Source: Perkinsela sp. CCAP 1560/9 (lineage: Eukaryota > Protista > Euglenozoa: Kinetoplastea). Taken from it: DNA of 64,000 bases. Where the stretch lies: positions 1 through 64,000 of the forward strand of contig CBFFSA010000044.1 of the NCBI GenBank assembly GCA_965644495.1, written 5' to 3'. The notes under the pieces were generated by a model. The model worked only from the letters and a program-made list of their open reading frames with translations. It did no database searches and was not told where the DNA came from. The position numbers and the translations under genes were made by a program. Positions 191 through 64,000 of this stretch are shown here, piece by piece (the first letter of the stretch is position 1; each line of letters starts with the position of its first letter).

Positions 191-828
191 ACCCATGTAC
201 AGCAACAAAAATATACGGACTCAGTCCGTGACGCTAACGGGGTGACGGCCGGGTCATTTGCGGAGCGCTATGCTACCGAAAACAAGAGAAGACAACGGGA
301 AGAGGCTAACACGGCTGGGTACAAGTTCGCGGCAATGGTAGTAGAGTCCTATGGCGCCTGGAGTCCCAGCGCCATGGCGGTTCTTAGGGAAATTTCAACT
401 AGAAAGTCGGCGAACTCAGGGGATACCCTCCCTAAAAGCGATGCCTTGCATCACCTCCTTTCATCTCTCAACATTACCCTCATGAGGTCGCAAGCTCGCA
501 TGCTTGTATTACGATCCCCAGCGGCGGGCCCTGACACAGTGCTCTTAGGTTACGGAAAAGAGGAGTAGGAGCTCAGTAGGAAAGTGAAGGAGTCGGTGTC
601 AAGGGAGGAGGCCTCGTTTCTATTTGCTGGTTTTTCTCGGGTGGTTTCTTTTTGGGGCTTTGGGTATTCGTTTTTTTGGGGAAGGTTTTTTTTTTTTGGG
701 GGGTGGGAACGGGTTCTTATTTGCTGTTTTTTGGGCCGTTTGCTCGGTTGAACATTCTTTTACTTTTCGTACAGTTGCTTGTTTCTATTCTGAGCCTAAC
801 TTTAAAAAGTATCTAAAAAAAAAAAAAA
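191..828 (+). mobile_element. 5'-truncated family E retrotransposon fragment (RLE C-terminus to stop at 568, T-rich 3' UTR, poly(A))
   Basis: Near-identical to 58877-59495; encodes ...AGSFAE...VVESYGAWS...LNITLMRSQAR. Confidence 0.92.
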
Positions 829-1085
829 GTAGTAAGTGTCTAGCAAAAAAAAGGACTCCACTCTTTCGGCCGAAGAAAAATTTCAGAAACTACGAGAATT
901 GCATCCTGATGGGCCCCAAAAAAAAAAAAAAAAAAAAAAAAAGGCTAATATCGGGTCAAATGCCCCGGAAGGGGGTTATAATTTTCAAAAAAAAAAAAAA
1001 AAAAATTCTAACACACACTTTCATTCAAATATTTTCATCGCATTCAAACGAACACAGAATTTAGGCAAAAAAAAAAAAAAAAAAA
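829..1085 (+). other. Chain of four short fragments, each followed by an oligo/poly(A) run
   Basis: 16-65 nt pieces separated by A runs; one encodes DSTLSAEEKFQKLRELHPDGP, resembling DSALPLWEKVDKLRDLHPKGP in family F. Confidence 0.75.
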
Positions 1086-1092
1086 CTTAGAT

Positions 1093-1128
1093 ACTTAACG
1101 ATAAAGATACAGTTTCTGTACCTTGTTG
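1093..1128 (+). other. Spliced-leader exon copy at 5' end of family A
   Basis: Contains the kinetoplastid/diplonemid SL core CAGTTTCTGTAC and ends TTG; followed by an AT-rich UTR, not a GT donor. Confidence 0.9.
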
Positions 1129-1174
1129 AATTATTTTCTTTATTTCATCTTTTCCAGGTACGCGGTTCTTTCTC

Positions 1175-4100
1175 ATGTCTGAAGACGATCTTCTCAAAGC
1201 CTCACCTCCGCCGATGGACGACGATTCATTTTTACAAGAGGAAGCAGTACACAATAGAGGATCCTGGGACCAGTTTGCTGGAAACGCACATCTCATTAAG
1301 CAACGGAGTACGTATAACGAATTGCTCTACACGACCCCTATTCCTGCGAACATTCCGGAAGAATGGAACATGAACGCCGCCTTGATCTCAACTGAGAACC
1401 AGACACGTGATACGGGACAGGTAGATAGTAGCGATGAGGAAACAAACCACTCACGAGTCATCAGATTACATCATGGACACCAAAAAATGCAATCTGATAG
1501 TAACACTATCACTAAAAAGTTTACTCGATGCCAACCATCTTCCACACCCCCAAGCGTCAAAGGGAATCGGGGAATCGTAAAGTCTCATCGAAAAGCGCGC
1601 GAACCAGCTACACCTCGAAAAGGGGAAGCGACGGAACATAACCCCGAAAACAACTCTCCACGCCAAATAATACAAGGAACTTCCCTTGAAATCCCACCTT
1701 CGACGAGCGAACCAGTTCTCACGTTTCCATCTTCCCAAAACCGTCCGACACAAAGGGAGTGCCCCGCAGAAAACTGTATTTGGAAAACTCGTGCCCATGG
1801 AGGTCAATGGCAGTCGTACTACAACCACGTTGCTTACCGACACGGAAATAACATACCCAATGACTGGTGGACAAAGGAAGGACGATTTCTCTGCGACGCA
1901 TGCGGTCGTCATTACGATATTAGCAAGAAAACTTCTCATTTGAATCATTGTAAAATGCAATCTACACCGCCCTCCTCGCAGCCGCCCTCACAACCACAGC
2001 AGCCTTCACAGCTGTCAGAGTCCGGAGAAGCCATGTACGATATGCAAGGTACGCATAGTCTACCGTCCCTAGAGGAAGTTTGCACGACCCAAATAAGCAC
2101 GTGCAAGGATGTCCCACACCGATGTCGATATCTGTGGACCAGAATTTTTACCGCAGCCCTCTCCACCGCGGTAAACGAAAACTCACTGAGAGCCTGGACC
2201 CTTCTTGCCTTGCTTCCGAAATGCGTCCTACCAGCCCCGTACCGAGGAGGCCGTAAAGCTCACAAGTCCTATACCTCCTACATCTCAAAGCGAATGGAAC
2301 TTTGGATACAAGGCCAATATACCACCCTATGGGCCCAAGCAAATTCGGAGCATGACAGGAAGCGCTCAAAAGTGCCGAATAATGAGATTGAGGGTGAAGA
2401 AGACAAGGCTGCAATACGGGCTGAAATTCTGGTTCGCCAAGGAGAATTTTCCCGAGGCATGGCTGCCCTTACTGCAGCTCCACTTGCACCATACAGCGAG
2501 GAAACCCTGCTAAAGCTGCAGGAAAAACACCCTAGCCCCCATGGTAATCCCATCTCGTGCCCCCTACCTCCCCTGGAAGAAGAAGCTTTAAAACTGGACG
2601 AATCCGAGGTAAGAAAAGCAGTAGATACCTTCCGTCGCGGATCCTCTGCTGGGACTATGGGGCTCCGGCCTGAACACCTCCAAACAGCGCTTCAAGAGCA
2701 CGTCGACCAGAATATGAATCCTCTTACGACGCTCACTTCCTTCGTAAACCATCTTCTAGCTGGCAAAGCCCCAGACGAAGTGCAACCTTTTTTTGCAGGG
2801 GCACGGCTATGCGCACTCGAAAAAGGGGAAGATGACGTGCGGCCTATCGCTGCGGGGGAAACCCTTAGACGCCTGGTGAGCAAGGCAGTATGCCTTTCGA
2901 TAAAAGAAAAAGCAGGATCCTTCTTTGGACGTCGTCAATACGGAGTCGCAGCGTCTGCTGGGGCGGAAAGAGTGATACACCTTTGTCGCCGTCTAATGAG
3001 AAATAATGAAGAAAATGAGAACATAACGTTCTGTAAGGTGGATCTTCGGAACGCCTTTAATAACGTGAGCCGACCCGTCTTCATCTTCCTCACACGAAAG
3101 CATTTCCCTGAACTATCCCCATGGGTAGAATGGTGTTATGCCAATCATAGCTGTCTTACATTCGGCGATGATTTTATCCCCTCGGCAGAAGGAGTGCAAC
3201 AAGGAGACCCTCTGGGCCCACTCCTCTTCTCTTTGGTGTTAGCAGAGGTAACAGAAGAAATTGCATCAAATTCTAACCTACGAACACAATTATGGTATTT
3301 AGATGACGGTGTGCTTGTAGGTGATCCCAAAGAAGTCCGTAAAGCCCTAGACGTCCTCGACGAGATAGGACCGAAGTGGGGACTCTTCCTGAATCTCTCC
3401 AAGTGCGAGATCATTACCCCCCCAGCATCAGCTCATACCTCCGTTTTCTTTCCTGACATCCCCAGTGATAAAATACGGTACGACGGGAACTTCGACATTC
3501 TTGGAAGCCCAATAGGCTCTGCGGAACACTGTGCGGAGTTTCTCATGACACACGCGATTGAACCAGCCCGCGAAACATTAGAAGCTACTGCTGTGTTAGA
3601 AGATCCCCAAATAGCTCTCGCACTAATACGGCAATGTTCGGGGTTTTGTCAGATGGTGTACGCACTGCGCACCACTCCTCCCCAAGCCCTTGGAGAATTA
3701 TGCCAAAAACTTGACTCTCATCTAGTCCAGGCCGTGGAGCACGCAATTTCTCCCTTAGGCGTCGCCGCTCGCGACCAAATACAACGACCAAAACGCCACG
3801 GCGGGTTCGGACTTCGCTCATCAATTCTCCACCAGTCAGCAGCCTACGTTTCTTCCGTCGCGCACGCCGCTAGCTTGGACAACTGGGACCCCACAGAAGC
3901 TGAGGGATTTTCCAGCTCAGCACATGACATAAATGACAAAGTTGGGACTGATCTGGTTGATCCATACACTGGACGCATTACCAAACCTAGTGTGCCTGGT
4001 GAATATCATGCAAATCGGAGCATCCTTTCCCGCCCAGCGAAAAGAAAACTCGCACTATCCCTCAATCACTCCCTTCTCCCGGTCTCGACGGATCAGGAAA

Positions 4101-4975
4101 AGATCATCCCGAGGCAAAAACATCTCAGCCAAGCTATCTCGGATAGGGAATTTCAAACGGCATATTCAAAGGCAGACGCAAGAACGCGGGCGCGATGGAT
4201 CTCGCAGTCCGGAAAAGGGGCCGGAAACTGGGCTTTCGCAACTCCCTCCAAGACCAGAGGCTACGCTTTCACTCACACGGAGTTTCGTACCCTAACACGC
4301 TGGTGGCTAGGCATGGGCGTCTTCCCCGAAGATCGGCCTTGCCCAGCTGACGGGTGCACCCTTCCCTTGCTCAAGAATGGAGAGCACGCTTTGCTCTGCA
4401 AGAACGGCCATGGTATCATCTCACGGCACAACGCTCTGGCCCAACAATTTACATCGTTCTGCAGCAGGGCCTTCCTGGCGCCACAGAGAGAGAAGAGTTT
4501 GGGAAATCGGGGTCCTGGGGGGGCTCTCACGAGACCAGCGGACGTATTTCTGCCAACGGCCTCCATCGCCAAAGGATCTTTAGCGCAAGGCATGGTCCTA
4601 GATTTTGCGGTCACTCACGCACAGCAAACAAAGTATTCGGACTCAGTCCACAATGCTAGCTGGGTGACCCCGGGGTCTTTTGCTGAGCACTTCGCGGAGA
4701 CCAAGGCGCGACAGCGACAAGAAGCAGAAAAAGCAGGACATCTCTTCACAGCGATGGTAGTGGAATCCTTTGGTTCCTGGAGCGAGAGTGCGCTAGCGTT
4801 ACTCCGGGACATCGGAACCCAACGGGCGAATGCGTCCAAAGGGCTCCTTTCACGAGACCAAGCGCGAAACGATCTCCTAACGGATCTGAACGTGACGCTA
4901 ATGCGTTCTCAAGCCAGGATGATGGTTTCGCGCATCCGCGTAGAGGACCCAGCGGATCCTTTGGTAGAGGCTTAA
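1175..4975 (+). CDS. Family A polyprotein: LsmAD-like, zinc fingers, reverse transcriptase, CCHC, RLE endonuclease (1266 aa)
   Basis: RPIAAGE, KVDLRNAFN, GVQQGDPLGP, WYLDDG, GGFGL, CPADGC..HALLC, RHN, RPADV..LDFAV motifs. Confidence 0.95.
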   Translation: MSEDDLLKASPPPMDDDSFLQEEAVHNRGSWDQFAGNAHLIKQRSTYNELLYTTPIPANIPEEWNMNAALISTENQTRDTGQVDSSDEETNHSRVIRLHHGHQKMQSDSNTITKKFTRCQPSSTPPSVKGNRGIVKSHRKAREPATPRKGEATEHNPENNSPRQIIQGTSLEIPPSTSEPVLTFPSSQNRPTQRECPAENCIWKTRAHGGQWQSYYNHVAYRHGNNIPNDWWTKEGRFLCDACGRHYDISKKTSHLNHCKMQSTPPSSQPPSQPQQPSQLSESGEAMYDMQGTHSLPSLEEVCTTQISTCKDVPHRCRYLWTRIFTAALSTAVNENSLRAWTLLALLPKCVLPAPYRGGRKAHKSYTSYISKRMELWIQGQYTTLWAQANSEHDRKRSKVPNNEIEGEEDKAAIRAEILVRQGEFSRGMAALTAAPLAPYSEETLLKLQEKHPSPHGNPISCPLPPLEEEALKLDESEVRKAVDTFRRGSSAGTMGLRPEHLQTALQEHVDQNMNPLTTLTSFVNHLLAGKAPDEVQPFFAGARLCALEKGEDDVRPIAAGETLRRLVSKAVCLSIKEKAGSFFGRRQYGVAASAGAERVIHLCRRLMRNNEENENITFCKVDLRNAFNNVSRPVFIFLTRKHFPELSPWVEWCYANHSCLTFGDDFIPSAEGVQQGDPLGPLLFSLVLAEVTEEIASNSNLRTQLWYLDDGVLVGDPKEVRKALDVLDEIGPKWGLFLNLSKCEIITPPASAHTSVFFPDIPSDKIRYDGNFDILGSPIGSAEHCAEFLMTHAIEPARETLEATAVLEDPQIALALIRQCSGFCQMVYALRTTPPQALGELCQKLDSHLVQAVEHAISPLGVAARDQIQRPKRHGGFGLRSSILHQSAAYVSSVAHAASLDNWDPTEAEGFSSSAHDINDKVGTDLVDPYTGRITKPSVPGEYHANRSILSRPAKRKLALSLNHSLLPVSTDQEKIIPRQKHLSQAISDREFQTAYSKADARTRARWISQSGKGAGNWAFATPSKTRGYAFTHTEFRTLTRWWLGMGVFPEDRPCPADGCTLPLLKNGEHALLCKNGHGIISRHNALAQQFTSFCSRAFLAPQREKSLGNRGPGGALTRPADVFLPTASIAKGSLAQGMVLDFAVTHAQQTKYSDSVHNASWVTPGSFAEHFAETKARQRQEAEKAGHLFTAMVVESFGSWSESALALLRDIGTQRANASKGLLSRDQARNDLLTDLNVTLMRSQARMMVSRIRVEDPADPLVEA

Positions 4976-5023
4976 GCCTCTACTGACAGTCCAGTTTCAG
5001 CACGAAGACGCCATAATATCCAG

Positions 5024-5262
5024 GACGGGTGCTGGCCGGGTCGACAGAGTCTATACTCACGCCTAGCCCGCGAGGGCTAGGTACCCCAAGTGAGGTAGTA
5101 CACGGGTAGTGAATCTCCTCCCCGTCGGTCAGCATCCTGTTTCGCGACCGTGTCGCTGTCGACACAGGCCCGCGCCTGCGCCCTCCCATATAGCAAGGGA
5201 AGGGTTCACAAGTCAGGCCGTGGAGTGGTCGAAAGACCCGGTCCGGAACGCGCGAATGGATT
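5024..5262 (+). ncRNA. Conserved structured RNA in family A 3' UTR (unknown class)
   Basis: Several hairpins with GNRA loops; compensatory changes relative to the family B and C copies. Confidence 0.75.
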
Positions 5263-5508
5263 GGGCGTGGATTGCTTCCTTTTTTATTATTATTGTTATC
5301 AGAATCATAAATAACTTAAGGCAGGTTGAATTACTAGTTTTGGGCTACAACATGTGAAATTGCTAATTTGATTGCTTGTTTACAAATCATATACCCCCCC
5401 CAATGGACCTTCATGGTTCATGTATTGGGTAATATAGAGGCAATGCCGCTTTTCATACTTCTCCCCCCTTAAAAAAAAAAAAAAAAACGATAAAGATACG
5501 TTAAAGAT

Positions 5509-5545
5509 ACTTTAACGATAAAGATACAGTTTCTGTACCTTGTTG
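5509..5545 (+). other. Spliced-leader exon copy at 5' end of family B
   Basis: ACTTTAACGATAAAGATACAGTTTCTGTACCTTGTTG. Confidence 0.9.
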
Positions 5546-5588
5546 AATTTTTTTTTTACGTAGTATTCTCTCGGGGCCCAGCTCTTTT

Positions 5589-8500
5589 ATGACGCAAACC
5601 AATACTCCTCAGAGCCCCGCACGCTCGAACGAGGACCACCCCTCATTCCATATGAGTGCAAAGGAAGGAGCTCTCAGCGTAGGCGCTCTCGCCGACGAAG
5701 AACGTGCGCACTCTCTCGGCAGTTGGGACCAATTCCAAGGAAACAAGCATTTGATTCGCGCTGTCAGCACATACGACGAACAACTCTACACTACACCAAT
5801 CCCGGCGAATATTCCTAAGGAATGGTTGGAACGCGCACGTCACATCTCCCAGGAAAAGGAAACCCCAGACACGGGCCACGTAGAGGCCGAAGACGAGGAG
5901 ATGCAGCACTGTGGGGTGAGAAGGCAGAAAATTACTCACGAGGCTACACCCACATCAAAGATCCCCGATGAAGCTCGGACGCTCAAATCCGCAGTGAAGG
6001 ATGCTCTTTCCCACCAAGGTCGAAACACTTCCCCATCGAAAGGAGTTACCAAAGCGGACTCGCGCTCGTCAAGGCGAACACCGGAGCCCCGGACATATTT
6101 CTCTTCACCGCGACACGCCGCAAACCAAAATAACTTCGCTGAAAAGACACAAACAAGAGAAGAGACTCGGGAATGTCCGGCCATGGGATGCACTTGGAGA
6201 AGTCTGCCGCACGGAGGGTCTTGGCAAGCGTTTTATAACCACGTCGCGTGTCGCCACGGAAACGGAGTTCCCGCTACCTGGTGGGATGCAGAAGGCCGAT
6301 TTCTTTGCAACTTATGCGGGCGCCATTATGACATCAACAAAAGGGAAGCTCATCCACAAGCCTGCAAAGGGAACGTTGCGAACCCCCAAATCCCATCGCG
6401 CGCAGCACACTCGAGCGACCCAAGCCACCTTCCGGGGACTCAAACTCATCACTCTGAACTTCCCTCGCTATCCTCTATCTGCACGCTGCGCCTGAACACT
6501 TGCAAGGACGTGCCTCCACGTTGCCGTCAACTGTGGGGAGAAATTATCACCAAAGCAGCCCAAAACGCAGTCACCGAAAACTCTACAGCCGCGTGGACCC
6601 TATTCGCCATGCTCCCCAAGTGCTTACTACCCGCCCCACACCGAGGAGGACGTAAGAACCACACAACTTACGCATCATACGTCCAGAAGTGCATGAACCG
6701 ATGGCTCGCGCAAGATTATGTCTCCCTATGGAATGAAGCAGTAGACAACGCACTCAAGAAACAATCTGTAGCCCCTACAACCGTTCACGACGAAGAGGAA
6801 AAGGCAGCTATCCGAGCAGAGCTTCTAGCTCGACAAGGCGAGTACTCTAGGGGTATGGCTGCACTCACGGCGGATGCTATGGCGCCTGACGACGAAGACA
6901 CACTCCTCAAACTTCAGAGCAAGCACCCGCCCCGACATCCAGACAGTGACATCATCGACTATACGCCTCCGCCCACAGCGCCCCTAATAATGGATGAACC
7001 CGTGGTAGCGAAAACTATCAAGAGCTTTCACCGGGGTTCCTCGTCCGGAACCATGGGTTTACGACCCGAGCACTTGCAAGCTGTACTCCTGGCGCACGTA
7101 GATAACACCGTGAAACCCCTTACTGCCCTTAAAAACCTCGTGAATCATCTACTAGCCGGGAAAGAACCCCTAGAGGTACAACCATATTTTGCGGGAGCCA
7201 GACTTTGCGCGCTTGAAAAGGGCGAAAATGACGTCCGCCCCATAGCAGCGGGAGAAACGATACGTCGATTGGTAAGCAAAGCGGCTTGCAATGCAGTGAG
7301 GAGCAAAGCCAGGGAATTTTTTAAGGGACTACAGTTCGGCGTCGCGACACCGGCCGGTTCGGAACGAATAATTCACACTTGCCGGCACGCAATGACAATT
7401 CATACGGACAACCCCGACATGGTATTATGTAAAGTCGACCTAAGCAACGCATTCAACAACGTTAGCAGAGCAACTTTCTTGAAACTTGTAGGCGAACATT
7501 TTCCGGAATTGTTCCCCTGGGCTAGCTGGTGCTATACGACAACTAGTGCTTTGACCTATCGTGACCACACACTCCTTTCGGATGAAGGCGTCCAACAGGG
7601 CGATCCCCTGGGACCACTTTTCTTTTCACTGGTCTCCTTGGAACTTGCAAAAGAAATCTATCACCAGGCCGACCTGGACTTGCAGCTATGGTACCTAGAC
7701 GACGGGATTCTCATTGGCAGGGCAGAAGACGTCAGGAATTCGTTGGATACAATCGCCAGAGTAGGTCCGCGATGGGGCCTATATCTGAACATGTCCAAGT
7801 GCGAAATAATCACCCCCCCTGCCTCGGCTAACGTTGTAACCATATTTCCGGACATACCCGACGCCAAAATAAACGTGTGCGGTAACTTTAGTGTCCTAGG
7901 AAGCCCAATTGGGTCCCCTGAGTACTGTACTGAATATCTGCTGACACACGCGGTTGAGCCCGCTGAAATGGCCCTTGATGCCATAACCAGAATCCGGGAC
8001 CCCCAGGTAGCCATGGCGCTAATTCGACAATGTGCTGGATTCTGCAAATTGGTACATGCTCTACGAACGACGCCCCCGCAATCAGTTATGAACCTCTGCA
8101 AGCGGCTCGACGACTTCCTAATGCACGCGGTCGAATCCACTCTATGTCCTTTGCCTCCCTCCGCACGCGCCCAAATTCAGCGCTTGAAAAGACACGGAGG
8201 TTTCGGTTTAAAATCGGCGACCGTGCACGCATCCTCCGCTTACGCCTCCTCTGTAGTTTTCGCGGCGGCCACGGACTCATGGGATGCTTCAGAAGTGGAG
8301 GGCTTTCTACAATCGATTGAAGACGTGAATTCGAAAGTTGGTATCAGTCTACTCGACTCAAACGGACTCGTGCGTTCCATCCCGCGCCATAAATGTGAAG
8401 AACTCTCCCCCAAAGCTCGCTTCACCAAGAGATCTCGCGAGGGAGAAACCAGACATCCCTTTGAACCCGCAAATCCGCCTTCCCTTCCTCGTGACCGCGC

Positions 8501-9455
8501 ATTGCCTCATTCCGAAGACTTTCCACACGATACAAACCCCCTTTACGCATCCGAAGATTGCGTTGACGCGCAGCCACCCGACTGGGCAAGTAATAGCGTC
8601 CCCCGCCAAAAAGACATAAGTTACGCGATCTCTGCCACAGAGTTCTCGCACGCATATGAAAACGCCGACGCCCGGACTCGCGCACGCTGGGCTTCTCAGT
8701 GTGGTAAAGGAGCAAGCAGTTGGGCGTTCGTAACTCCTTCCAGAGACACGGGCCACGCCTTTAACCCCACAGAATTCCGCATCCTATCCCGCTGGTGGTT
8801 AGGTGTGCCCGTGTACGGGGAAGAAGGTACATGTCCCAAGGGGAACTGCACACCCCCATTGGACATACACGGCGATCACGCTCTCACATGCAAGCACGGG
8901 GACGGTATCATCGGCCGTCACAACGCCTTGGCCGATCACTTTGCCGATACTTGCAGTAACGCACGCCTAGCTCCCCAACGGGAAAAAAGCCTCGGGAACC
9001 GGGGCCCCGGAGGCGCTCTGACTAGGCCCGGGGACGTCTTCCTTCCGAGTCTCTTCCTCGGGAAACCTATCGTGCTTGACTTCGCGGTCACTCACGCCCA
9101 GCAATCTAAATACACGGACACAGTCCGAAATGCTAGCTGGGTGGCCGCGGGGTCCTTCGCAGAGCATTATGCCTCAGAGCAGAAAGTCCGACAACGCCGT
9201 GAATCTGAAGATGCCGGAAGCGATTTCACAGCTATGGTGGTCGAGAGCTATGGCTCTTGGAGTGCCAGTGCTTTAGCCGTTCTCCGGAAGGTTGGAGAAC
9301 GAAGGGCAAAAGCGTCCAACGGTATCTTGACAGACGAGGCCTCTACGCTCCGTCTCGTGACCGACATGAACGTAACATTGATGCGTTGCCAGGCACGCAT
9401 GATGATTACGCGCCTGCCGGCTGTGGACCCCTTGCCCCCTTTAATCGAGCAATAG
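5589..9455 (+). CDS. Family B polyprotein: LsmAD-like, ZnF, RT, CCHC, RLE (1288 aa)
   Basis: WDQF..STYDEQLYTT, YLDD, GVQQGDPLGP, CPKGNC..HALTC, RPGDV..LDFAV. Confidence 0.95.
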   Translation: MTQTNTPQSPARSNEDHPSFHMSAKEGALSVGALADEERAHSLGSWDQFQGNKHLIRAVSTYDEQLYTTPIPANIPKEWLERARHISQEKETPDTGHVEAEDEEMQHCGVRRQKITHEATPTSKIPDEARTLKSAVKDALSHQGRNTSPSKGVTKADSRSSRRTPEPRTYFSSPRHAANQNNFAEKTQTREETRECPAMGCTWRSLPHGGSWQAFYNHVACRHGNGVPATWWDAEGRFLCNLCGRHYDINKREAHPQACKGNVANPQIPSRAAHSSDPSHLPGTQTHHSELPSLSSICTLRLNTCKDVPPRCRQLWGEIITKAAQNAVTENSTAAWTLFAMLPKCLLPAPHRGGRKNHTTYASYVQKCMNRWLAQDYVSLWNEAVDNALKKQSVAPTTVHDEEEKAAIRAELLARQGEYSRGMAALTADAMAPDDEDTLLKLQSKHPPRHPDSDIIDYTPPPTAPLIMDEPVVAKTIKSFHRGSSSGTMGLRPEHLQAVLLAHVDNTVKPLTALKNLVNHLLAGKEPLEVQPYFAGARLCALEKGENDVRPIAAGETIRRLVSKAACNAVRSKAREFFKGLQFGVATPAGSERIIHTCRHAMTIHTDNPDMVLCKVDLSNAFNNVSRATFLKLVGEHFPELFPWASWCYTTTSALTYRDHTLLSDEGVQQGDPLGPLFFSLVSLELAKEIYHQADLDLQLWYLDDGILIGRAEDVRNSLDTIARVGPRWGLYLNMSKCEIITPPASANVVTIFPDIPDAKINVCGNFSVLGSPIGSPEYCTEYLLTHAVEPAEMALDAITRIRDPQVAMALIRQCAGFCKLVHALRTTPPQSVMNLCKRLDDFLMHAVESTLCPLPPSARAQIQRLKRHGGFGLKSATVHASSAYASSVVFAAATDSWDASEVEGFLQSIEDVNSKVGISLLDSNGLVRSIPRHKCEELSPKARFTKRSREGETRHPFEPANPPSLPRDRALPHSEDFPHDTNPLYASEDCVDAQPPDWASNSVPRQKDISYAISATEFSHAYENADARTRARWASQCGKGASSWAFVTPSRDTGHAFNPTEFRILSRWWLGVPVYGEEGTCPKGNCTPPLDIHGDHALTCKHGDGIIGRHNALADHFADTCSNARLAPQREKSLGNRGPGGALTRPGDVFLPSLFLGKPIVLDFAVTHAQQSKYTDTVRNASWVAAGSFAEHYASEQKVRQRRESEDAGSDFTAMVVESYGSWSASALAVLRKVGERRAKASNGILTDEASTLRLVTDMNVTLMRCQARMMITRLPAVDPLPPLIEQ

Positions 9456-57800: not shown

Positions 57801-59253
57801 CCACGGAGGCAGAAGGTTTCGAAGAAGCCGTAAGCGATGTCAATAAAAGGGTGGGGAAAGACATCGTAGACATTCAATCAGGGAGAATACCGAAAGGTTT
57901 CGCCTTGTCATCCACTCCGCCTTTCAGTAAACGTGGCATTACAGAATCCAGCACCGAATCAGTAATCCCTCGGCAACGAGATCTAAGCGATGCAATCTCA
58001 TCTCACGAGTTTCATCAAGCACTCTCCCTCGCTGACCCACGTACGAGGGCTCGATGGATTTCGGAAACGGGGCACGGAGCAGCAGAATGGGCTTTTGTAT
58101 TGCCGTCGAAAAAGAACGGCCACGCTTATACCCCAACCGAGTTTCGGACTCTGGTACGTTGGTGGCTAGGGGAGCAAATATATCCGGGTCCCCGATCTTG
58201 TCCCATGGAGAAGTGCACCCAACCGTTGGGTCCTGAGGGCGATCACGCATTGGCTTGCAAAAGTGGACATGGTATCACCTCGCGGCATAATGCCCTGGCC
58301 GCAGAATTTTCTTCTGAATGTTCTAAGGCTGGGTTCACTACCCAGAGGGAAATGAGCTTGGGAAACAAGGGGCCGGGGGGCGCCCTCACCAGGCCTGGTG
58401 ATGTCTAATAGTTCACGTTTTGAAATTTAGCCGAGGGGCGGCTATATATTTGCCTGCTGTCCCTTCGGGGCACATAATTTTCTCAAATTATGATGTAGTA
58501 TTCTCTAATTGCATGGAGGGGGGTGTTTACTCGTTTGTTATATTCTTGTTAGGTTGTTATTTTGTTACGTTTAAAGTTTTGTGCCCACCCACCGAGCCCC
58601 CAGCCATTTGGCCGAGGGTTCCGGTGGGGGGGAACCCCGTTAACAGAGTGACATTGATTGTGTTGTTTTATGCAGGCTTGTTTCTTTTCCATCTTTGTGC
58701 GTGTGAAATGAATGAATGATATGTTGTGTCATTTTGAATTACGATTGAGCTATTCATAGTTGTTCATTTATTCATATATGTTATCAGTGTATATGTTTCC
58801 AGGGAGCCCCTCGGCGTGGATTTCTTCATCAAAAATTTCGGGCTTGGCGAGGGTCTTGTGCTTGACTTTGCCGTCACCCATGTACAGCAACAAAAATATA
58901 CGGACTCAGTCCGTGACGCTAACGGGGTGACGGCCGGGTCATTTGCGGAGCGCTATGCTACCGAGAACAAGAGAAGACAACGGGAAGAGGCTAACACGGC
59001 TGGGTACAAGTTCGCGGCAATGGTAGTAGAGTCCTATGGCGCCTGGAGTCCCAGCGCCATGGCGGTTCTTAGGGAAATTTCAACTAGAAAGATGGCGAAC
59101 TCAGGGGATACCCTCCCTAAAAGCGATGCCTTGCATCACCTCCTTTCATCTCTCAACATTACCCTCATGAGGTCGCAAGCTCGCATGCTTGTATTACGAT
59201 CCCCAGCGGCGGTCCCTGACACAGTGCTCTTAGGTTACGGAAAAGAGGAGTAG
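54845..59253 (+). pseudogene. Family E polyprotein ORF interrupted by a 419-bp insertion
   Basis: Removing 58406-58824 restores in-frame RPGDV|FIKNFGLGEGLVLDFAVTH. Confidence 0.88.
58406..58824. other. 419-bp foreign T-rich insertion
   Basis: Absent from the other families' RLE motif; flanked by GATGTC / GATTTC. Confidence 0.85.
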
Positions 59254-59501
59254 GAGCTCAGTAGGAAAGTGAAGGAGTCGGTGTCAAGGGAGGAGGCCTC
59301 GTTTCTATTTGCTGGTTTTCTCGGGTGGTTTCTTTTTGGGGCTTCGTTTCTTTTTGGGTATTCGTTTTTTGGGGAAGGTTTTTTTTGGGGGTGGGAACGG
59401 GTTCTTATTTGCTGTTTTTTGGGCCGTTTGCTCGGTTGAACATTCTTTTACTTTTCGTACAGTTGCTTGTTTCTATTCTGAGCCTAACTTTAAAAAAAAA
59501 A

Positions 59502-59629
59502 ATGTGAAATTGCTAATTTGATTGCTTGTTTACAAATCATATACCCCCCCCAATGGACCTACTTGGTTCGTCTACTGAGTAAAAATATAGAGGCAATGCC
59601 GCGTTTTATACTTCTCCCCCCTATTTATT

Positions 59630-59663
<34 letters not shown>
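59502..59663 (+). mobile_element. Isolated A/C-type 3'-terminal module with poly(A)
   Basis: Matches ~5351-5470; absent after the other E 3' end (~810). Confidence 0.85.
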
Positions 59664-59664
<1 letters not shown>

Positions 59665-62600
59665 GATAAAGATAAAAAGCTAAATACTTTAACGATAAAG
59701 ATACAGTTTCTGTACCTTGTTGAAATTTTTTTTTACGTAGTATTCTCTCGGGGCCCAGCTCTTTTATGACGCAAACCAATACTCCTCAGAGCCCCGCACG
59801 CTCGAACGAGGACCACCCCTCATTCCATATGAGTGCAAAGGAAGGAGCTCTCAGCGTAGGCGCTCTCGCCGACGAAGAACGTGCGCACTCTCTCGGCAGT
59901 TGGGACCAATTCCAAGGAAACAAGCATTTGATTCGCGCTGTCAGCACATACGACGAACAACTCTACACTACACCAATCCCGGCGAATATTCCTAAGGAAT
60001 GGTTGGAACGCGCACGTCACATCTCCCAGGAAAAGGAAACCCCAGACACGGGCCACGTAGAGGCCGAAGACGAGGAGATGCAGCACTGTGGGGTGAGAAG
60101 GCAGAAAATTACTCACGAGGCTACACCCACATCAAAGATCCCCGATGAAGCTCGGACGCTCAAATCCGCAGTGAAGGATGCTCTTTCCCACCAAGGTCGA
60201 AACACTTCCCCATCGAAAGGAGTGACCAAAGCGGACTCGCGCTCGTCAAGGCGAACACCGGAGCCCCGGACATATTTCTCTTCACCGCGACACGCCGCAA
60301 ACCAAAATAACTTCGCTGAAAAGACACAAACAAGAGAAGAGACTCGGGAATGTCCGGCCATGGGATGCACTTGGAGAAGTCTGCCGCACGGAGGGTCTTG
60401 GCAAGCGTTTTATAACCACGTCGCGTGTCGCCACGGAAACGGAGTTCCCGCTACCTGGTGGGATGCAGAAGGCCGATTTCTTTGCAACTTATGCGGGCGC
60501 CATTATGACATCAACAAAAGGGAAGCTCATCCACAAGCCTGCAAAGGGAACGTTGCGAACCCCCAAATCCCATCGCGCGCAGCACACTCGAGCGACCCAA
60601 GCCACCTTCCGGGGACTCAAACTCATCACTCTGAACTTCCCTCGCTATCCTCTATCTGCACGCTGCGCCTGAACACTTGCAAGGACGTGCCTCCACGTTG
60701 CCGTCAACTGTGGGGAGAAATTATCACCAAAGCAGCCCAAAACGCAGTCACCGAAAACTCTACAGCCGCGTGGACCCTATTCGCCATGCTCCCCAAGTGC
60801 TTACTACCCGCCCCACACCGAGGAGGACGTAAGAACCACACAACTTACGCATCATACGTCCAGAAGTGCATGAACCGATGGCTCGCGCAAGATTATGTCT
60901 CCCTATGGAATGAAGCAGTAGACAACGCACTCAAGAAACAATCTGTAGCCCCTACAACCGTTCACGACGAAGAGGAAAAGGCAGCTATCCGAGCAGAGCT
61001 TCTAGCTCGACAAGGCGAGTACTCTAGGGGTATGGCTGCACTCACGGCGGATGCTATGGCGCCTGACGACGAAGACACACTCCTCAAACTTCAGAGCAAG
61101 CACCCGCCCCGACATCCAGACAGTGACATCATCGACTATACGCCTCCGCCCACAGCGCCCCTAATAATGGATGAACCCGTGGTAGCGAAAACTATCAAGA
61201 GCTTTCACCGGGGTTCCTCGTCCGGAACCATGGGTTTACGACCCGAGCACTTGCAAGCTGTACTCCTGGCGCACGTAGATAACACCGTGAAACCCCTTAC
61301 TTCCCTTAAAAACCTCGTGAATCATCTACTAGCCGGGAAAGCACCCCTAGAGGTACAACCATATTTTGCGGGAGCCAGACTTTGCGCGCTTGAAAAGGGC
61401 GAAAATGACGTCCGCCCCATAGCAGCGGGAGAAACGATACGTCGATTGGTAAGCAAAGCGGCTTGCAATGCAGTGAGGAGCAAAGCCAGGGAATTTTTTA
61501 AGGGACTACAGTTCGGCGTCGCGACACCGGCCGGTTCGGAACGAATAATTCACACTTGCCGGCACGCAATGACAATTCATACGGACAACCCCGACATGGT
61601 ATTATGTAAAGTCGACCTAAGCAACGCATTCAACAACGTTAGCAGAGCAACTTTCTTGAAACTTGTAGGCGAACATTTTCCGGAATTGTTCCCCTGGGCT
61701 AGCTGGTGCTATACGACAACTAGTGCTTTGACCTATCGTGACCACACACTCCTTTCGGATGAAGGCGTCCAACAGGGCGATCCCCTGGGACCACTTTTCT
61801 TTTCACTGGTCTCCTTGGAACTTGCAAAAGAAATCTATCACCAGGCCGACCTGGACTTGCAGCTATGGTACCTAGACGACGGGATTCTCATTGGCAGGGC
61901 AGAAGACGTCAGGAATTCGTTGGATACAATCGCCAGAGTAGGTCCGCGATGGGGCCTATATCTGAACATGTCCAAGTGCGAAATAATCACCCCCCCTGCC
62001 TCGGCTAACGTTGTAACCATATTTCCGGACATACCCGACGCCAAAATAAACGTGTGCGGTAACTTTAGTGTCCTAGGAAGCCCAATTGGGTCCCCTGAGT
62101 ACTGTACTGAATATCTGCTGACACACGCGGTTGAGCCCGCTGAAATGGCCCTTGATGCCATAACCAGAATCCGGGACCCCCAGGTAGCCATGGCGCTAAT
62201 TCGACAATGTGCTGGATTCTGCAAATTGGTACATGCTCTACGAACGACGCCCCCGCAATCAGTTATGAACCTCTGCAAGCGGCTCGACGACTTCCTAATG
62301 CACGCGGTCGAATCCACTCTATGTCCTTTGCCTCCCTCCGCACGCGCCCAAATTCAGCGCTTGAAAAGACACGGAGGTTTCGGTTTAAAATCGGCGACCG
62401 TGCACGCATCCTCCGCTTACGCCTCCTCTGTAGTTTTCGCGGCGGCCACGGACTCATGGGATGCTTCAGAAGTGGAGGGCTTTCTACAATCGATTGAAGA
62501 CGTGAATTCGAAAGTTGGTATCAGTCTACTCGACTCAAACGGACTCGTGCGTTCCATCCCGCGCCATAAATGTGAAGAACTCTCCCCCAAAGCTCGCTTC

Positions 62601-64000
62601 ACCAAGAGATCTCGCGAGGGAGAAACCAGACATCCCTTTGAACCCGCAAATCCGCCTTCCCTTCCTCGTGACCGCGCATTGCCTCATTCCGAAGACTTTC
62701 CACACGATACAAACCCCCTTTACGCATCCGAAGATTGCGTTGACGCGCAGCCACCCGACTGGGCAAGTAATAGCGTCCCCCGCCAAAAAGACATAAGTTA
62801 CGCGATCTCTGCCACAGAGTTCTCGCACGCATATGAAAACGCCGACGCCCGGACTCGCGCACGCTGGGCTTCTCAGTGTGGTAAAGGAGCAAGCAGTTGG
62901 GCGTTCGTAACTCCTTCCAGAGACACGGGCCACGCCTTTAACCCCACAGAATTCCGCATCCTATCCCGCTGGTGGTTAGGTGTGCCCGTGTACGGGGAAG
63001 AAGGTACATGTCCCAAGGGGAACTGCACACTCCCATTGGACATACACGGCGATCACGCTCTCACATGCAAGCACGGGGACGGTATCATCGGCCGTCACAA
63101 CGCCTTGGCCGATCACTTTGCCGATACTTGCAGTAACGCACGCCTAGCTCCCCAACGGGAAAAAAGCCTCGGGAACCGGGGCCCCGGAGGCGCTCTGACT
63201 AGGCCCGGGGACGTCTTCCTTCCGAGTCTCTTCCTCGGGAAACCTATCGTGCTTGACTTCGCGGTCACTCACGCCCAGCAATCTAAATACACGGACACAG
63301 TCCGAAATGCTAGCTGGGTGGCCGCGGGGTCCTTCGCAGAGCATTATGCCTCAGAGCAGAAAGTCCGACAACGCCGTGAATCTGAAGATGCCGGAAGCGA
63401 TTTCACAGCTATGGTGGTCGAGAGCTATGGCTCTTGGAGTGCCAGTGCTTTAGCCGTTCTCCGGAAGGTTGGAGAACGAAGGGCAAAAGCGTCCAACGGT
63501 ATCTTGACAGACGAGGCCTCTACGCTCCGTCTCGTGACCGACATGAACGTAACATTGATGCGTTGCCAGGCACGCATGATGATTACGCGCCTGCCGGCTG
63601 TGGACCCCTTGCCCCCTTTAATCGAGCAATAGCACGATGACGGATGTGCAAGATGGGCCGCTCAGCCGGAACTCGAACAGCTGGTCCGGATGCTGGTCGA
63701 TGCCGGCAGGGTCTATGCTCACGCCTAGTCCGCCAGGGCTAGGTACTCCAAGTGAGGTAGGACATGGGTAGGGAACTTTGTTCCTCCCCGTCGGCCAGCA
63801 TCATGCTCCGCGACCGTGCCGCTGTCGGCACAGGCCCATTGCTTGCGCCCTCTCGTACAACAAGAGAAGGGTTACCAAGGCAAGCTGGGAGAGGTCGAAA
63901 GACCCGGTCCGGAACGCGCGAATGGTTCGGGGAAAGTCTGCCCCTCCTAGCCGAGGGAGACCTTACCCTCCCTGGAAAGCTGGTAAGATTGGTAAGGGGA
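59664..64000 (+). mobile_element. Family B copy with intact ORF, 3' UTR running off the window (SL 59686-59722; structured RNA ~63688-63927)
   Basis: Near-identical to 5488-9830. Confidence 0.95.
59766..63632 (+). CDS. Family B polyprotein (1288 aa)
   Basis: Intact ORF with a few substitutions relative to 5589-9455. Confidence 0.95.
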   Translation: MTQTNTPQSPARSNEDHPSFHMSAKEGALSVGALADEERAHSLGSWDQFQGNKHLIRAVSTYDEQLYTTPIPANIPKEWLERARHISQEKETPDTGHVEAEDEEMQHCGVRRQKITHEATPTSKIPDEARTLKSAVKDALSHQGRNTSPSKGVTKADSRSSRRTPEPRTYFSSPRHAANQNNFAEKTQTREETRECPAMGCTWRSLPHGGSWQAFYNHVACRHGNGVPATWWDAEGRFLCNLCGRHYDINKREAHPQACKGNVANPQIPSRAAHSSDPSHLPGTQTHHSELPSLSSICTLRLNTCKDVPPRCRQLWGEIITKAAQNAVTENSTAAWTLFAMLPKCLLPAPHRGGRKNHTTYASYVQKCMNRWLAQDYVSLWNEAVDNALKKQSVAPTTVHDEEEKAAIRAELLARQGEYSRGMAALTADAMAPDDEDTLLKLQSKHPPRHPDSDIIDYTPPPTAPLIMDEPVVAKTIKSFHRGSSSGTMGLRPEHLQAVLLAHVDNTVKPLTSLKNLVNHLLAGKAPLEVQPYFAGARLCALEKGENDVRPIAAGETIRRLVSKAACNAVRSKAREFFKGLQFGVATPAGSERIIHTCRHAMTIHTDNPDMVLCKVDLSNAFNNVSRATFLKLVGEHFPELFPWASWCYTTTSALTYRDHTLLSDEGVQQGDPLGPLFFSLVSLELAKEIYHQADLDLQLWYLDDGILIGRAEDVRNSLDTIARVGPRWGLYLNMSKCEIITPPASANVVTIFPDIPDAKINVCGNFSVLGSPIGSPEYCTEYLLTHAVEPAEMALDAITRIRDPQVAMALIRQCAGFCKLVHALRTTPPQSVMNLCKRLDDFLMHAVESTLCPLPPSARAQIQRLKRHGGFGLKSATVHASSAYASSVVFAAATDSWDASEVEGFLQSIEDVNSKVGISLLDSNGLVRSIPRHKCEELSPKARFTKRSREGETRHPFEPANPPSLPRDRALPHSEDFPHDTNPLYASEDCVDAQPPDWASNSVPRQKDISYAISATEFSHAYENADARTRARWASQCGKGASSWAFVTPSRDTGHAFNPTEFRILSRWWLGVPVYGEEGTCPKGNCTLPLDIHGDHALTCKHGDGIIGRHNALADHFADTCSNARLAPQREKSLGNRGPGGALTRPGDVFLPSLFLGKPIVLDFAVTHAQQSKYTDTVRNASWVAAGSFAEHYASEQKVRQRRESEDAGSDFTAMVVESYGSWSASALAVLRKVGERRAKASNGILTDEASTLRLVTDMNVTLMRCQARMMITRLPAVDPLPPLIEQ

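What the first reader, a model, noticed from the sequence alone, without database searches (positions are those of the whole stretch)
191..64000. Multi-family concatemer of SL-capped, polyadenylated retroelement mRNAs, suggesting array growth by serial template jumping or end-extension
Seen: about 20 units from at least six RT families joined poly(A)-to-5'-end. Joins go to an SL (1086, 5488, 10022, 25087, 29419, 40467, 54728, 59664) or straight into truncated coding sequence (13391, 20747, 33355, 36131, 44403, 48291). No target-site duplication is visible and there is almost no host DNA. Known: CRE/SLACS/CZAR insert site-specifically into SL RNA genes with target duplications; R2-type RTs can jump from a template 5' end to another RNA's 3' end; HeT-A/TART and Giardia GilM/GilT form head-to-tail terminal arrays. 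Inference: joins to arbitrary truncated ends argue against simple sequence-specific insertion. They favour addition of each new cDNA onto the free end of the previous one, i.e. a cooperative retroelement system that extends or heals DNA ends.
Basis: partly seen in the sequence, partly recalled or inferred. Interest (0 to 1): 0.92.

Follow-up and report, generated by a model that had tools for sequence, protein, structure and literature searches.

The report
Retrotransposon copies stacked on poly(A) tails
This 64-kb stretch of a kinetoplastid-type protist genome is a real pile of retrotransposon copies made from leader-capped, polyadenylated RNAs. It most likely grows because new copies land in the poly(A) tails of older ones and the pile then duplicates locally, not because it extends or heals chromosome ends.

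Summary
The window holds about 27 poly(A)-ended units from at least seven R2-like (RT plus restriction-like endonuclease) families. They are joined poly(A)-to-head. All nine full spliced-leader (SL) heads sit within about 32 nt behind a poly(A) run; shuffles give none.

The end-extension reading is not supported:
- Orientation flips twice.
- The same stacks lie deep inside a 4.1-Mb contig.
- The leading (TCTTTCTTCC)n is the head array of another LINE clade, not a telomere.
- One unit (U6, 33356-36131) sits between the same two flanks that are joined directly by A34 elsewhere in the window. At least one event was therefore an insertion into, or next to, an internal poly(A) tract.
- Six D copies differ by three substitutions. 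Two share one 5' truncation point found nowhere else in 21 Mb, which means local duplication.

Best reading (0.68): target-primed reverse transcription into poly(A)/poly(T) tracts, which hides target duplications, followed by unequal crossover. It works like Zepp in green algae, but with SL-headed RLE elements.

Public runs gave only short contigs that break at every poly(A), so the junctions remain unconfirmed by reads. The scan already reached the same reading on other pieces of this genome.

The parts
1..190 (.). (TCTTTCTTCC)19 at the contig start. It is the head array of a different LINE clade, not a telomere repeat.
   Evidence: tandem repeat; the same array occurs inside C1 at 397 kb and 402 kb within a 5.1-kb repeat, behind a conserved hairpin flank.
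191..828 (+). 5'-truncated 3' part of family E with A14, joined to the satellite.
   Evidence: 96.7% to 58875-59496.
829..1085 (+). String of three or four tiny fragments (63-114 nt), each ending in A19-A25.
1086..5487 (+). A1: full-length family A element. It has an SL head, an intact 1266-aa ORF (1175-4975) with LsmAD-like N-terminus, RT, CCHC and RLE, and A17.
5488..10021 (+). B1: full-length family B element. Partial SL pieces precede the full SL. ORF 5589-9455, A29.
10022..10917 (+). Chimeric short unit: 13 extra nt, SL, 808 nt of family C, the last 55 nt of a B 3' UTR, then A36.
   Evidence: 10827-10910 is identical to 64115-64198.
10918..13390 (+). F2: 5'-truncated copy of the distant family F with A15.
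13391..17004 (+). F1: 5'-truncated family F copy (ORF 13337-16522), broken at its 3' side at 17004 with no poly(A).
17005..17579 (.). Unassigned 575 bp. It is the only candidate non-element DNA and matches nothing else in the window.
17580..18173 (+). 5' piece of another element, headed by SL nt 23-38 only. It abuts the tail end of the minus-strand stack.
18174..18642 (-). Three short poly(A)-ended fragments (46, 138 and 285 nt; A11, A27, A27).
18643..20747 (-). U10: family A copy, 5'-truncated, A12.
   Evidence: 97.6% to 3430-5346.
20748..25086 (-). U9: full-length family D. SL head, intact 1360-aa ORF, full 3' end, A28.
25087..29418 (-). U8: full-length D. SL followed by an 8-nt relict SL repeat. 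The 3' end stops 22 nt early, then A34.
29419..33355 (-). U7: D copy truncated at D position 419 (head CACCAGTG), A36. It is identical to U4.
33356..36131 (-). U6: 5'-truncated family A2 copy with an early 3' end and A19. It lies between a D tail (A24) and the U7 head. This is the 'filled' site.
   Evidence: 99.89% identical to a full-length A2 element on contig C7.
36132..40466 (-). U5: full-length D. SL plus 8-nt relict. The 3' end stops 9 nt early, then A24.
40467..44403 (-). U4: D copy truncated at position 419, A36. Twin of U7.
   Evidence: 25120-33374 matches 36168-44422 at 99.988%.
44404..48291 (-). U3: D copy truncated at position 456. Its tail stops 9 nt early, and A34 is joined directly to the U4 head. 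This is the 'empty' site.
48292..48949 (-). U2: 637-nt A-like 3' fragment with A21, preceded by an 8-nt piece with A13.
48950..53478 (-). U1: full-length family B copy. One in-frame stop splits the ORF. Partial SL pieces precede the SL. A21.
53479..53527 (-). A25, an 8-nt piece and A16, at the head-to-head boundary with the next block.
53528..54465 (+). G: 0.9-kb unit without RT. It is headed by a truncated, stuttered SL 3' end and ends in A25. A full SL-headed twin lies on C7.
   Evidence: 100% over 912 bp.
54466..54727 (+). 262-nt 3' fragment (A2-like 3' UTR module) with A13.
54728..59502 (+). E1: full-length family E. About 32 extra nt precede the SL. ORF 54845-58408 ends inside the RLE motif. 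A11.
59503..59663 (+). 161-nt A-like 3' fragment with A32.
59664..64000 (+). B3: full-length family B. It runs to 64198 on the contig and is followed there by the same 13-nt-plus-SL family C join as at 10022.

Best explanation
The window is a nest of R2-like non-LTR retrotransposons. Each has a single ORF with N-terminal Cys/His motifs, a reverse transcriptase and a C-terminal CCHC plus restriction-like endonuclease (RLE). Short riders accompany them.

Shown:
- Each unit is a DNA copy of a processed RNA.
- It begins with the cell's 38-nt spliced-leader exon, ending exactly at the splice donor position.
- It ends in poly(A) added at one of several alternative sites.

Inferred:
- New copies integrate by target-primed reverse transcription.
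- The primer is the T-run opposite a resident copy's poly(A) tail, which anneals to the poly(A) of the incoming RNA.
- The new copy therefore lands inside or at the end of the old tail, in the same orientation.
- Its 5' end, full-length with SL or truncated, then abuts the remaining A-run, and any target-site duplication is made of A's and cannot be seen.
- Any poly(A)-tailed unit of any family can host the next one, which makes multi-family head-to-tail stacks.

Shown for the D sub-array: once several near-identical copies lie side by side, the stack also grows by local duplication. This is unequal crossover, or possibly re-copying of a read-through two-unit RNA.

The stack is not a chromosome-end structure.
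For: Anatomy:
- 27 poly(A)-to-head joins.
- 9 of 9 SL heads lie behind poly(A); shuffles give none.
- Extra or SL-derived nucleotides lie between the A-run and the SL. This marks a 5' junction of the downstream unit, not a 3' junction of the upstream one.

Internal event:
- The flanks CTCTTCCCCCCT and CACCAGTGCTG are joined by A34 at 44404-44437.
- The same flanks are separated by A24 + U6 (2.7 kb) + A19 at 33356-36155.
- That truncated head occurs only twice in 21 Mb, both times here.
- U8 lacks the last 22 nt that U5 has, so U5 cannot derive from U8.

Local duplication:
- 8255 bp are repeated at 99.988%.
- Six D copies differ by 3 substitutions.

Not terminal:
- There are three orientation blocks.
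- Stacks lie deep inside the 4.1-Mb contig C1 and on many other contigs.

Preference, not obligation: about 26% of SL heads genome-wide lie within 9 nt behind A10 (40 of 156 on the reverse strand).

Machinery:
- RVT_1 is present.
- The C-terminal CCHC..RHN..E..RPxD..D..K region aligns to the R2 endonuclease region (E 4e-6).

RNA origin:
- The SL matches the SL RNA gene exon up to the donor.
- There are three alternative 3' ends.
- SL nt 2 reads T instead of A in 14 of 39 sampled heads, with stray bases before it. This fits copying of a modified capped 5' end.

Precedent: Zepp clusters arise by nested insertion into existing copies, giving tandem arrays of 5'-truncated units (PMC8226300).
Against: - No target-site duplication or empty allele outside an A-tract was found; my automated TSD scan gave only noise.
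- Only one clean empty/filled pair turned up in about 300 kb examined. It depends on the assembly being right in a 27-kb run of near-identical copies.
- Public runs gave only short contigs that break at every poly(A) junction, so no read bridges a join.
- The block boundaries (17004, 17579, 18173, 53527) are not explained by this model.
- Strings of 8-114-nt poly(A)-ended pieces could equally be template switches within one event.
- About three quarters of SL heads in the genome are not directly behind poly(A), so other targets exist.
- Whether the endonuclease itself cuts A/T tracts is untested.
Confidence: 0.68

Rival explanations
1. End addition, as for HeT-A/TART. Each new cDNA is primed from the free 3' end of a chromosome end or break. 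The array then grows outward, and truncated heads come from terminal erosion.
For: - The join types (poly(A) to full or truncated 5' end, no TSD) are what this model predicts.
- The first block (191-17004) has its 5' ends towards the contig start.
- No TTAGGG x3 occurs in 21 Mb, and no telomere-like end was seen on 40 contig ends.
- No TERT RBD hit was found, but the control was silent too.
Against: - Orientation flips twice within 64 kb.
- The same stacks are internal in a 4.1-Mb contig.
- The 10-bp repeat at the contig start is an internal LINE head array elsewhere.
- Two D units share one truncation point, which independent erosion would not give.
- The source copy (U4-U5, complete 3' end) lies distal to its derivative (U7-U8), or else U6 was inserted internally. 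Either way the terminal order is violated.
Confidence: 0.07
2. Each stack is made in one run. A single priming event is followed by serial template jumps of the R2-like RT from one RNA to the poly(A) end of the next, giving a concatemer cDNA.
For: - Partial SL pieces (about nt 9-22) in front of full SLs show that the RT restarts on another SL-bearing RNA after reaching a 5' end.
- One unit is a chimera of family C and a B 3' end.
- There are runs of 8-114-nt poly(A)-ended pieces.
- An earlier scan note (s1-377443) reports a ten-unit stack inside one 9-bp TSD. I did not check it.
Against: - End-to-end jumping does not explain joins to bodies truncated at arbitrary internal points.
- The same truncated head appears twice, and the 8.3-kb duplicate needs a pre-existing DNA dimer.
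- U6 sits between flanks that are joined directly elsewhere.
- Units in one stack range from intact to stop-bearing, 3'-broken or 96.7%-identical copies, which suggests different ages.
Confidence: 0.1
3. SL-targeted insertion. As with CRE/SLACS/CZAR, the endonuclease recognises the spliced-leader sequence, here the DNA-encoded SL at the head of a resident copy. New copies land just upstream of it.
For: - All nine SL heads in the window have a poly(A) in front.
- The elements are RLE-type, like the SL-gene specialists.
Against: - At least 12 joins go from poly(A) to a truncated body with no SL.
- U6 or its neighbour was inserted at a join without any SL.
- Extra nucleotides lie between the A-run and the SL, which a precise 3' junction would not have.
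- The SL behind each poly(A) is complete, not split at an internal position.
- Only 6 SL-plus-intron genes were found, against 331 SL copies.
Confidence: 0.05
4. Artefact: a mis-assembly of near-identical repeats, or cDNA concatemers that entered the assembly.
For: - The 70-kb contig is almost pure repeat and ends in a satellite.
- Poly(A) runs cap at about 36 nt.
- No read-level bridge of any junction could be obtained.
Against: - The same join types occur inside Mb-scale contigs next to ordinary sequence.
- They also occur in ENA assembly ERZ24900291, although that may derive from the same data and so may not be independent.
- Units include stop-bearing, 3'-broken and interrupted copies, and there are no adaptor sequences at the joins.
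- The unit bodies are present in four runs of one study.
- Each key join is shorter than one long read.
Confidence: 0.05

Closest known systems
Zepp / Zepp-like LINEs of green algae (Chlorella, Coccomyxa, Chlamydomonas)
   Same: New copies insert into existing copies. This builds head-to-tail clusters made largely of 5'-truncated units (PMC8226300; PMC3446292). The clusters were first taken for telomeric structures and are mostly internal.
   Different: - Zepp is one L1-clade family with an AP-type endonuclease. Here at least seven RLE-type (R2-like) families and their riders share the stacks.
- Copies here carry a spliced leader.
- There are several clusters per contig, not one per chromosome.
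CRE1/CRE2, SLACS, CZAR of trypanosomatids
   Same: Euglenozoan host, single-ORF RT plus C-terminal RLE, poly(A) tail, and an association with the spliced leader (from my knowledge of the family; RLE shown).
   Different: - Those elements insert site-specifically inside SL RNA genes and split the SL exon.
- Here the SL is complete, is carried on the RNA as its 5' end, and copies are dispersed or stacked on poly(A).
- Phylogenetic membership could not be tested because no reference sequences were on hand.
HeT-A / TART / TAHRE of Drosophila; GilM/GilT of Giardia
   Same: Head-to-tail arrays joined poly(A)-to-5' end, with variable 5' truncation, several families in one array and no TSD.
   Different: Those arrays are terminal and uniformly oriented. 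This one flips orientation, recurs internally and shows an internal insertion or duplication.
SL-tagged retrogenes of dinoflagellates
   Same: There is a DNA-encoded spliced leader at the 5' end of retro-copies. Relict partial SLs behind it are taken as traces of repeated trans-splicing and retro-copying (PMC12014239 and PMC5585692, listed). Here relicts occur in U5/U8 and at L067:3780-3836.
   Different: There it concerns ordinary genes in a different phylum. Here the tagged RNAs are the retrotransposons themselves, and the copies stack on poly(A).
SL fragments near retrotransposons in Perkinsela sp. (Tanifuji et al. 2017)
   Same: That kinetoplastid has a 38-nt SL, one intact SL gene, hundreds of SL fragments and 24 cases next to retrotransposon sequences (PMC5601477).
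   Different: - The elements there were described as ingi/L1Tc-like.
- No poly(A)-to-SL stacking or SL-headed full-length copies were described.
- The SL intron there is 468 bp, whereas the gene repeat here is 297 bp. This is probably a different organism.
L1/Alu insertion into A-rich tails of older copies in mammals
   Same: The T-rich primer strand anneals to the RNA poly(A), so A-tails are favoured targets and the TSDs are A-rich (my knowledge).
   Different: It is an AP-endonuclease element with a mild preference and does not build long multi-family stacks.

Membership tests
RLE-bearing (R2-supergroup) non-LTR retrotransposons | Reverse transcriptase domain in a single long ORF | tested here: met
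   RVT_1 at E 1e-15 to 1e-19 in families A, A2, B, D, E and F. The best solved relatives are R2 proteins.
RLE-bearing (R2-supergroup) non-LTR retrotransposons | C-terminal CCHC motif followed by a PD-(D/E)xK restriction-like endonuclease | tested here: met
   Invariant C..C..H..C, RHN, E, RPxD, D and K columns. A profile of the C-terminal 260 aa hits the C-terminal region of R2 structures 9nl3 and 9dou at E 4e-6. The E1 copy is cut off inside this motif.
CRE / SLACS / CZAR clade | Site-specific insertion inside the SL RNA gene, splitting the SL exon, with target duplication | tested here: not met
   The SL at each head is complete up to the donor and is followed by the element's 5' UTR, not by the SL intron. 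There are 331 SL copies but only 6 with the intron.
CRE / SLACS / CZAR clade | Phylogenetic placement of the RT with CRE-clade references | not testable with these tools
   Protein searches returned only unnamed metagenome proteins. No CRE, SLACS or CZAR sequence was available from a tool.
Telomeric retrotransposon arrays (HeT-A/TART type) | Uniform orientation, poly(A) towards the centromere | tested here: not met
   Three blocks: + 191-18173, - 18174-53527, + 53528-64000.
Telomeric retrotransposon arrays (HeT-A/TART type) | Confined to chromosome ends | tested here: not met
   The same stacks lie at C1:1.44, 2.3 and 3.1-3.27 Mb of a 4.1-Mb contig, and at C2, C4 and C10. Whether this particular 70-kb contig is terminal cannot be told.
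Telomeric retrotransposon arrays (HeT-A/TART type) | Strictly terminal order of addition (distal means younger, no internal gain) | tested here: not met
   See the empty/filled pair and the direction of descent U5 to U8.
Zepp-type self-nesting LINE clusters | Head-to-tail arrays formed by insertion into resident copies, with frequent 5' truncation | tested here: met
   This is a likeness of mechanism only.
Zepp-type self-nesting LINE clusters | L1-clade element with AP endonuclease | tested here: not met
   The endonuclease is RLE-type, and no AP-endonuclease domain was found by Pfam.
One-run template-jump concatemer | Whole stack bounded by one target-site duplication and units of equal age | tested here: inconclusive
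   The TSD scan gave no clear case. Units differ in intactness. A duplicated truncated head argues against one run for the D sub-array.
SL-tagged retro-copies (dinoflagellate type) | DNA-encoded SL at the 5' end, sometimes with relict partial SLs behind it | tested here: met

The most novel reading that the evidence does not exclude
In an organism where no TTAGGG tract and no telomere-like contig end was seen, poly(A)-primed stacking by these RLE elements could also act at broken or eroding DNA ends. Some stacks, and the strings of very short poly(A)-ended pieces, would then be products of end healing or of multi-template runs of one RT. A second new element may be that whole stack segments are re-copied from polycistronic read-through RNA: the U7-U8 dimer carries its own alternative poly(A) site.
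Probability: 0.1. Interest if true: 0.85.

Novelty: new variant of a known kind. Interest (0 to 1): 0.5.

Why it matters
Restriction-like-endonuclease retrotransposons are the textbook site-specific elements (28S rDNA, SL genes, microsatellites). Here a whole radiation of them seems to use the poly(A) tail of any earlier retro-copy as its preferred site. That makes self-growing, multi-family nests.

The copies also carry the host's spliced leader, with cap-proximal misreads and relict leaders. This gives a built-in tag for full-length copying and for counting rounds of retro-copying in a kinetoplastid-type genome, as relict leaders do in dinoflagellates.

In practice, such nests break assemblies and can be mistaken for telomeric or SL-gene-associated structures.

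Tried and rejected
- Reads: one search and one lay. Only short assembled contigs of four runs from one study were available. They stop at 33345-33384 and 36124-36310, so no junction is bridged. This is inconclusive, not negative.
- Telomere checks: TTAGGG x5 and x3 gave no hit in 21 Mb. The Telomerase_RBD family gave no hit, but the controls were silent too, so this is uninformative. The 40 ends of contigs C1-C20 show satellites or unique sequence and no N runs.
- (TCTTTCTTCC)n as a telomere: rejected.
- TSD search around stacks by exact flank matching: only repeat noise.
- Further empty/filled pairs in about 300 kb: none beyond U6.
- Master copies behind an SL-gene promoter: none; the promoter flank occurs only at the two true genes.
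- Copies trans-spliced at the downstream CCAG acceptor: none.
- Rfam on the window: no family reached threshold.
- Protein Atlas and homology search: only unnamed RT clusters.
- The idea that the right-hand block (59503 onward) is a retro-copy of a three-unit RNA from the left block: dropped. The A-fragment tails differ, and the four B copies share no derived substitutions. Only the join from B's tail to the family C head is clearly shared.


Full report
WHERE THE WINDOW LIES

The window is the first 64,000 bases of a 69,982-base contig (G000:C44) in a 21-Mb set of 110 contigs. It opens with (TCTTTCTTCC)19. Nearly all the rest is retrotransposon sequence. Every ORF of 250 aa or more is either a reverse transcriptase (RVT_1) or a fragment of an RT-family polyprotein.

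Pairwise comparison gives one clade of five families, A, A2, B, D and E, at 47-71% amino-acid identity. Family F is distant (22%). There are also units without RT.

The proteins carry a C-terminal CCHC motif followed by conserved RHN, E, RPxD, D and K positions. A profile of that region matches the C-terminal endonuclease region of solved R2 proteins at E 4e-6, and R2 proteins are also the best whole-protein matches. These are therefore R2-like elements with a restriction-like endonuclease (RLE). Whether they belong to the CRE/SLACS/CZAR clade could not be tested, because protein searches returned only unnamed sequences.

THE OBSERVATION

The leader is genuine. Two tandem SL RNA genes at C1:661.3 kb read AACTTTAACGATAAAGATACAGTTTCTGTACCTTGTTG followed by a GT donor. 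In the element copies the same 38 nt stop exactly at the donor position and run on into the element's 5' UTR.

The window has nine SL cores, and all lie within about 32 nt behind a run of A12 or more. Eight fit the pattern, where 100 shuffles gave none. The ninth has a 31-nt spacer.

Splitting the contig at its A/T runs gives about 27 poly(A)-to-next-unit joins in the window. They lead to full SL heads, to bodies truncated at arbitrary points, or to very short pieces of 8-285 nt.

In the clade that ends in CTCTTCCCCCCTATTAATTGC, the 3' ends fall at three alternative positions. That is what heterogeneous polyadenylation gives.

At the other end, 16 of 39 sampled SL heads match the gene only from nt 3 (CTTTAACG). 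In 14 of these 16 the base before it is T, where the gene has A, and stray G, C or longer extras often precede it. I read this as copying of a modified, capped 5' end. That is an inference.

THE JOINS ARE NOT ALL INDEPENDENT

- 25120-33374 and 36168-44422 are 99.988% identical over 8255 bp.
- The six family D copies differ by three substitutions plus A-run lengths and ends.
- The join at 10022, with its unique 13 extra nucleotides, recurs just beyond the window at 64199.
- Four B copies differ by 12 substitutions, none shared.

The families are very young, and recombination among copies is expected.

THE TEST BETWEEN MODELS

Read on the minus strand, the D sub-array is:
- U3 (truncated at D position 456)
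- U4 (truncated at 419)
- U5 (full, SL)
- U6 (family A2, truncated)
- U7 (truncated at 419)
- U8 (full, SL)
- U9 (full, SL)
- U10 (family A, truncated)

The tail of U3 is joined to the head of U4 as ...CTCTTCCCCCCT-A34-CACCAGTGCTG.... The tail of U5 and the head of U7 have the same two flanks, but between them lie A24, the 2.7-kb U6 and A19. The truncated head CACCAGTG behind an A-run occurs only twice in the 21 Mb, both times here, so U4 and U7 are copies of one event.

Two histories fit.
- S1: an unequal crossover between D copies duplicated the pair, and U6 then inserted into the A34 tract.
- S4: a read-through RNA spanning U4, A36 and U5 was polyadenylated 22 nt early and copied into the tail of U6, upstream of U9.

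U8 lacks the last 22 nt that U5 has, so U5 cannot descend from U8. Under S4 the source therefore lies distal to its copy.

Either history needs an insertion at an internal poly(A) tract. Neither fits strictly terminal addition, or a single run of template jumps.

U6 itself is a fresh copy. A full-length SL-headed A2 element on contig C7 is 99.89% identical to it.

FURTHER POINTS AGAINST AN END STRUCTURE

- Orientation is + to 18173, - to 53527, then + again.
- The SL 30-mer occurs 331 times in the genome, against six SL-plus-intron genes.
- Stacks of the same kind lie deep inside the 4.1-Mb contig C1 and on C2, C4, C7, C10, C22 and C24.
- About a quarter of SL heads genome-wide sit within 9 nt behind A10 (40 of 156 on the reverse strand). 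This is a strong preference, not an obligation. Family D heads also occur singly on four other contigs.
- The 10-bp repeat at the window start recurs inside C1 at 397 and 402 kb, as a short array within a 5.1-kb repeat behind a conserved hairpin flank. A related flank precedes the (CCCCCCCTGGAT)n found at other contig ends. These satellites are head arrays of another LINE clade, and they break the assembly. An earlier scan note (s1-682841) gave me that lead, and I checked it only on these loci.

WHY THE SL IS NOT THE LANDING SITE

At least a dozen joins go to truncated bodies without any SL. The U6 event happened at such a join. The extra nucleotides between the A-run and the SL are typical of the 5' junction of the downstream unit. 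The SL behind each poly(A) is whole, not split.

WHAT REMAINS OF THE TEMPLATE-JUMPING IDEA

Pieces of SL (about nt 9 to 20 or 22) stand in front of full SLs at 5488, 53478 and 59664, and at several other loci. One short unit fuses 808 nt of family C to the last 55 nt of a B 3' UTR. The RT evidently switches templates at or near RNA 5' ends. The strings of tiny poly(A)-ended pieces (829-1085, 18174-18642) could be made that way. I cannot tell them from repeated abortive insertions.

WEAK POINTS

- No read bridges any join. The four public runs, from one study, are kept only as short assembled contigs that end at each poly(A).
- No TSD outside an A-tract was found.
- Only one empty/filled pair was found.
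- The four block boundaries are unexplained.
- No TTAGGG tract and no telomere-like end was seen, and the telomerase search was uninformative. What caps the chromosomes is therefore unknown, and a role of such stacks at ends is not excluded, only unsupported.
- ENA assembly ERZ24900291 holds the same families and the same stacks, but it may derive from the same data.

OPEN POINT ABOUT THE LEADER

Every copy encodes the SL in DNA. No copy sits behind the SL-gene promoter flank. No copy has the SL joined at the downstream pyrimidine-tract CCAG acceptor.

Some copies carry relict SL 3' parts behind the SL. U5 and U8 repeat CCTTGTTG. A D copy at L067:3780-3836 has the SL, then SL nt 23-38, then nt 29-38. 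One relict starts right after the SL-internal CAG.

This resembles the relict leaders of dinoflagellate retrogenes (papers listed). It suggests that read-through transcripts are trans-spliced again within or at the end of the encoded leader. The Perkinsela genome paper reports hundreds of SL fragments, some beside retrotransposons, and frequent TG and AT 'acceptors' (PMC5601477). That may be the same phenomenon in a relative.

COMPARISON AND VERDICT

[quoted passage not shown] Those clusters are mostly internal despite first being seen at termini (PMC3446292).

The differences here are the RLE-type enzyme, the many families sharing one nest, and the spliced-leader head.

I rate this a new variant of a known kind, of moderate interest. 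Other agents of this scan reached the same 'stacked on poly(A) tails' reading on other pieces of this genome (s1-682843, s1-389382, s1-377445). I formed the hypothesis before reading them and tested it here on independent evidence.

Noticed in passing
window 1-190; L046 (C1:397.0 and 402.2 kb); ends of C6, C9, C16, C17: The 10-bp (TCTTTCTTCC)n and 12-bp (CCCCCCCTGGAT)n satellites sit behind a shared conserved flank with a GC hairpin. They look like variable-length head arrays of another LINE clade, and many contigs end in them.
   Followed up: partly
SL heads in the window and in 14 other loci: 16 of 39 heads match the SL gene only from nt 3, and in 14 of these the preceding base is T where the gene has A. 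Stray G, C or longer extras often lie upstream. This looks like misreading of a modified cap-proximal base.
   Followed up: partly
window 29380-29395, 40428-40443 (U8, U5); 53528-53549; L067:3780-3836: Relict partial SL 3' ends lie directly behind the full SL (8, 7+7, and 16+10 nt). They are possibly traces of repeated trans-splicing and retro-copying cycles, as in dinoflagellates.
   Followed up: partly
window 5488-5510, 53445-53478, 59664-59687; C2:561.4 kb; C22:25.6 kb: Partial SL pieces (about nt 9-22) stand in front of full SLs. The RT seems to restart on a second SL-bearing RNA after reaching a 5' end.
   Followed up: partly
window 10022-10917: Chimeric unit: SL plus 808 nt of family C, fused to the last 55 nt of a family B 3' UTR and A36. 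The intact family C copy lies at 64199-68857 of the contig.
   Followed up: partly
window 58400-59502: The family E ORF stops at 58408 inside the RPxD endonuclease motif, although the unit runs on for 1.1 kb. Another note (s1-399933) calls this a 419-nt insert. I did not check the insert.
   Followed up: no
window 1256-1466, 5760-5900, 10220-10400, 54985-55160: A weak LsmAD (ataxin-2 type) match occurs near the N-terminus of families B, C and E (E 8e-6 to 1e-3). Family D has Cys/His-rich sequence there instead.
   Followed up: no
window 5026-5259, 9510-9754, 18909-19148, 33566-33811, 48555-48794, 49209-49453, 63687-63925: A module of about 240 nt just after the stop codon is kept at 83-85% identity between families that share only about 50% protein identity. 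No Rfam family matches it.
   Followed up: partly
window 48929-48949 and 53479-53511: Two 'units' consist of only 8 nt (GGGGCTGC, CTCGCAAC) plus A13 and A25, wedged between full units.
   Followed up: no
whole genome G000: There is no (TTAGGG)3 anywhere in 21 Mb, and none of the 40 ends of the 20 largest contigs looks telomeric. Poly(A) runs at joins never exceed about 36 nt.
   Followed up: partly
window 51974-51978: The family B copy U1 has a single in-frame stop that splits its ORF into 481 and 821 aa. B1 and B3 are intact.
   Followed up: no
window 53528-54465; C7:12050-12985: A 0.9-kb SL-headed, poly(A)-tailed unit (G) has no RT and a different 3' end, and its two copies are 100% identical over 912 bp. 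It is mobilised in trans, so the machinery does not need the clade's 3' motif.
   Followed up: partly
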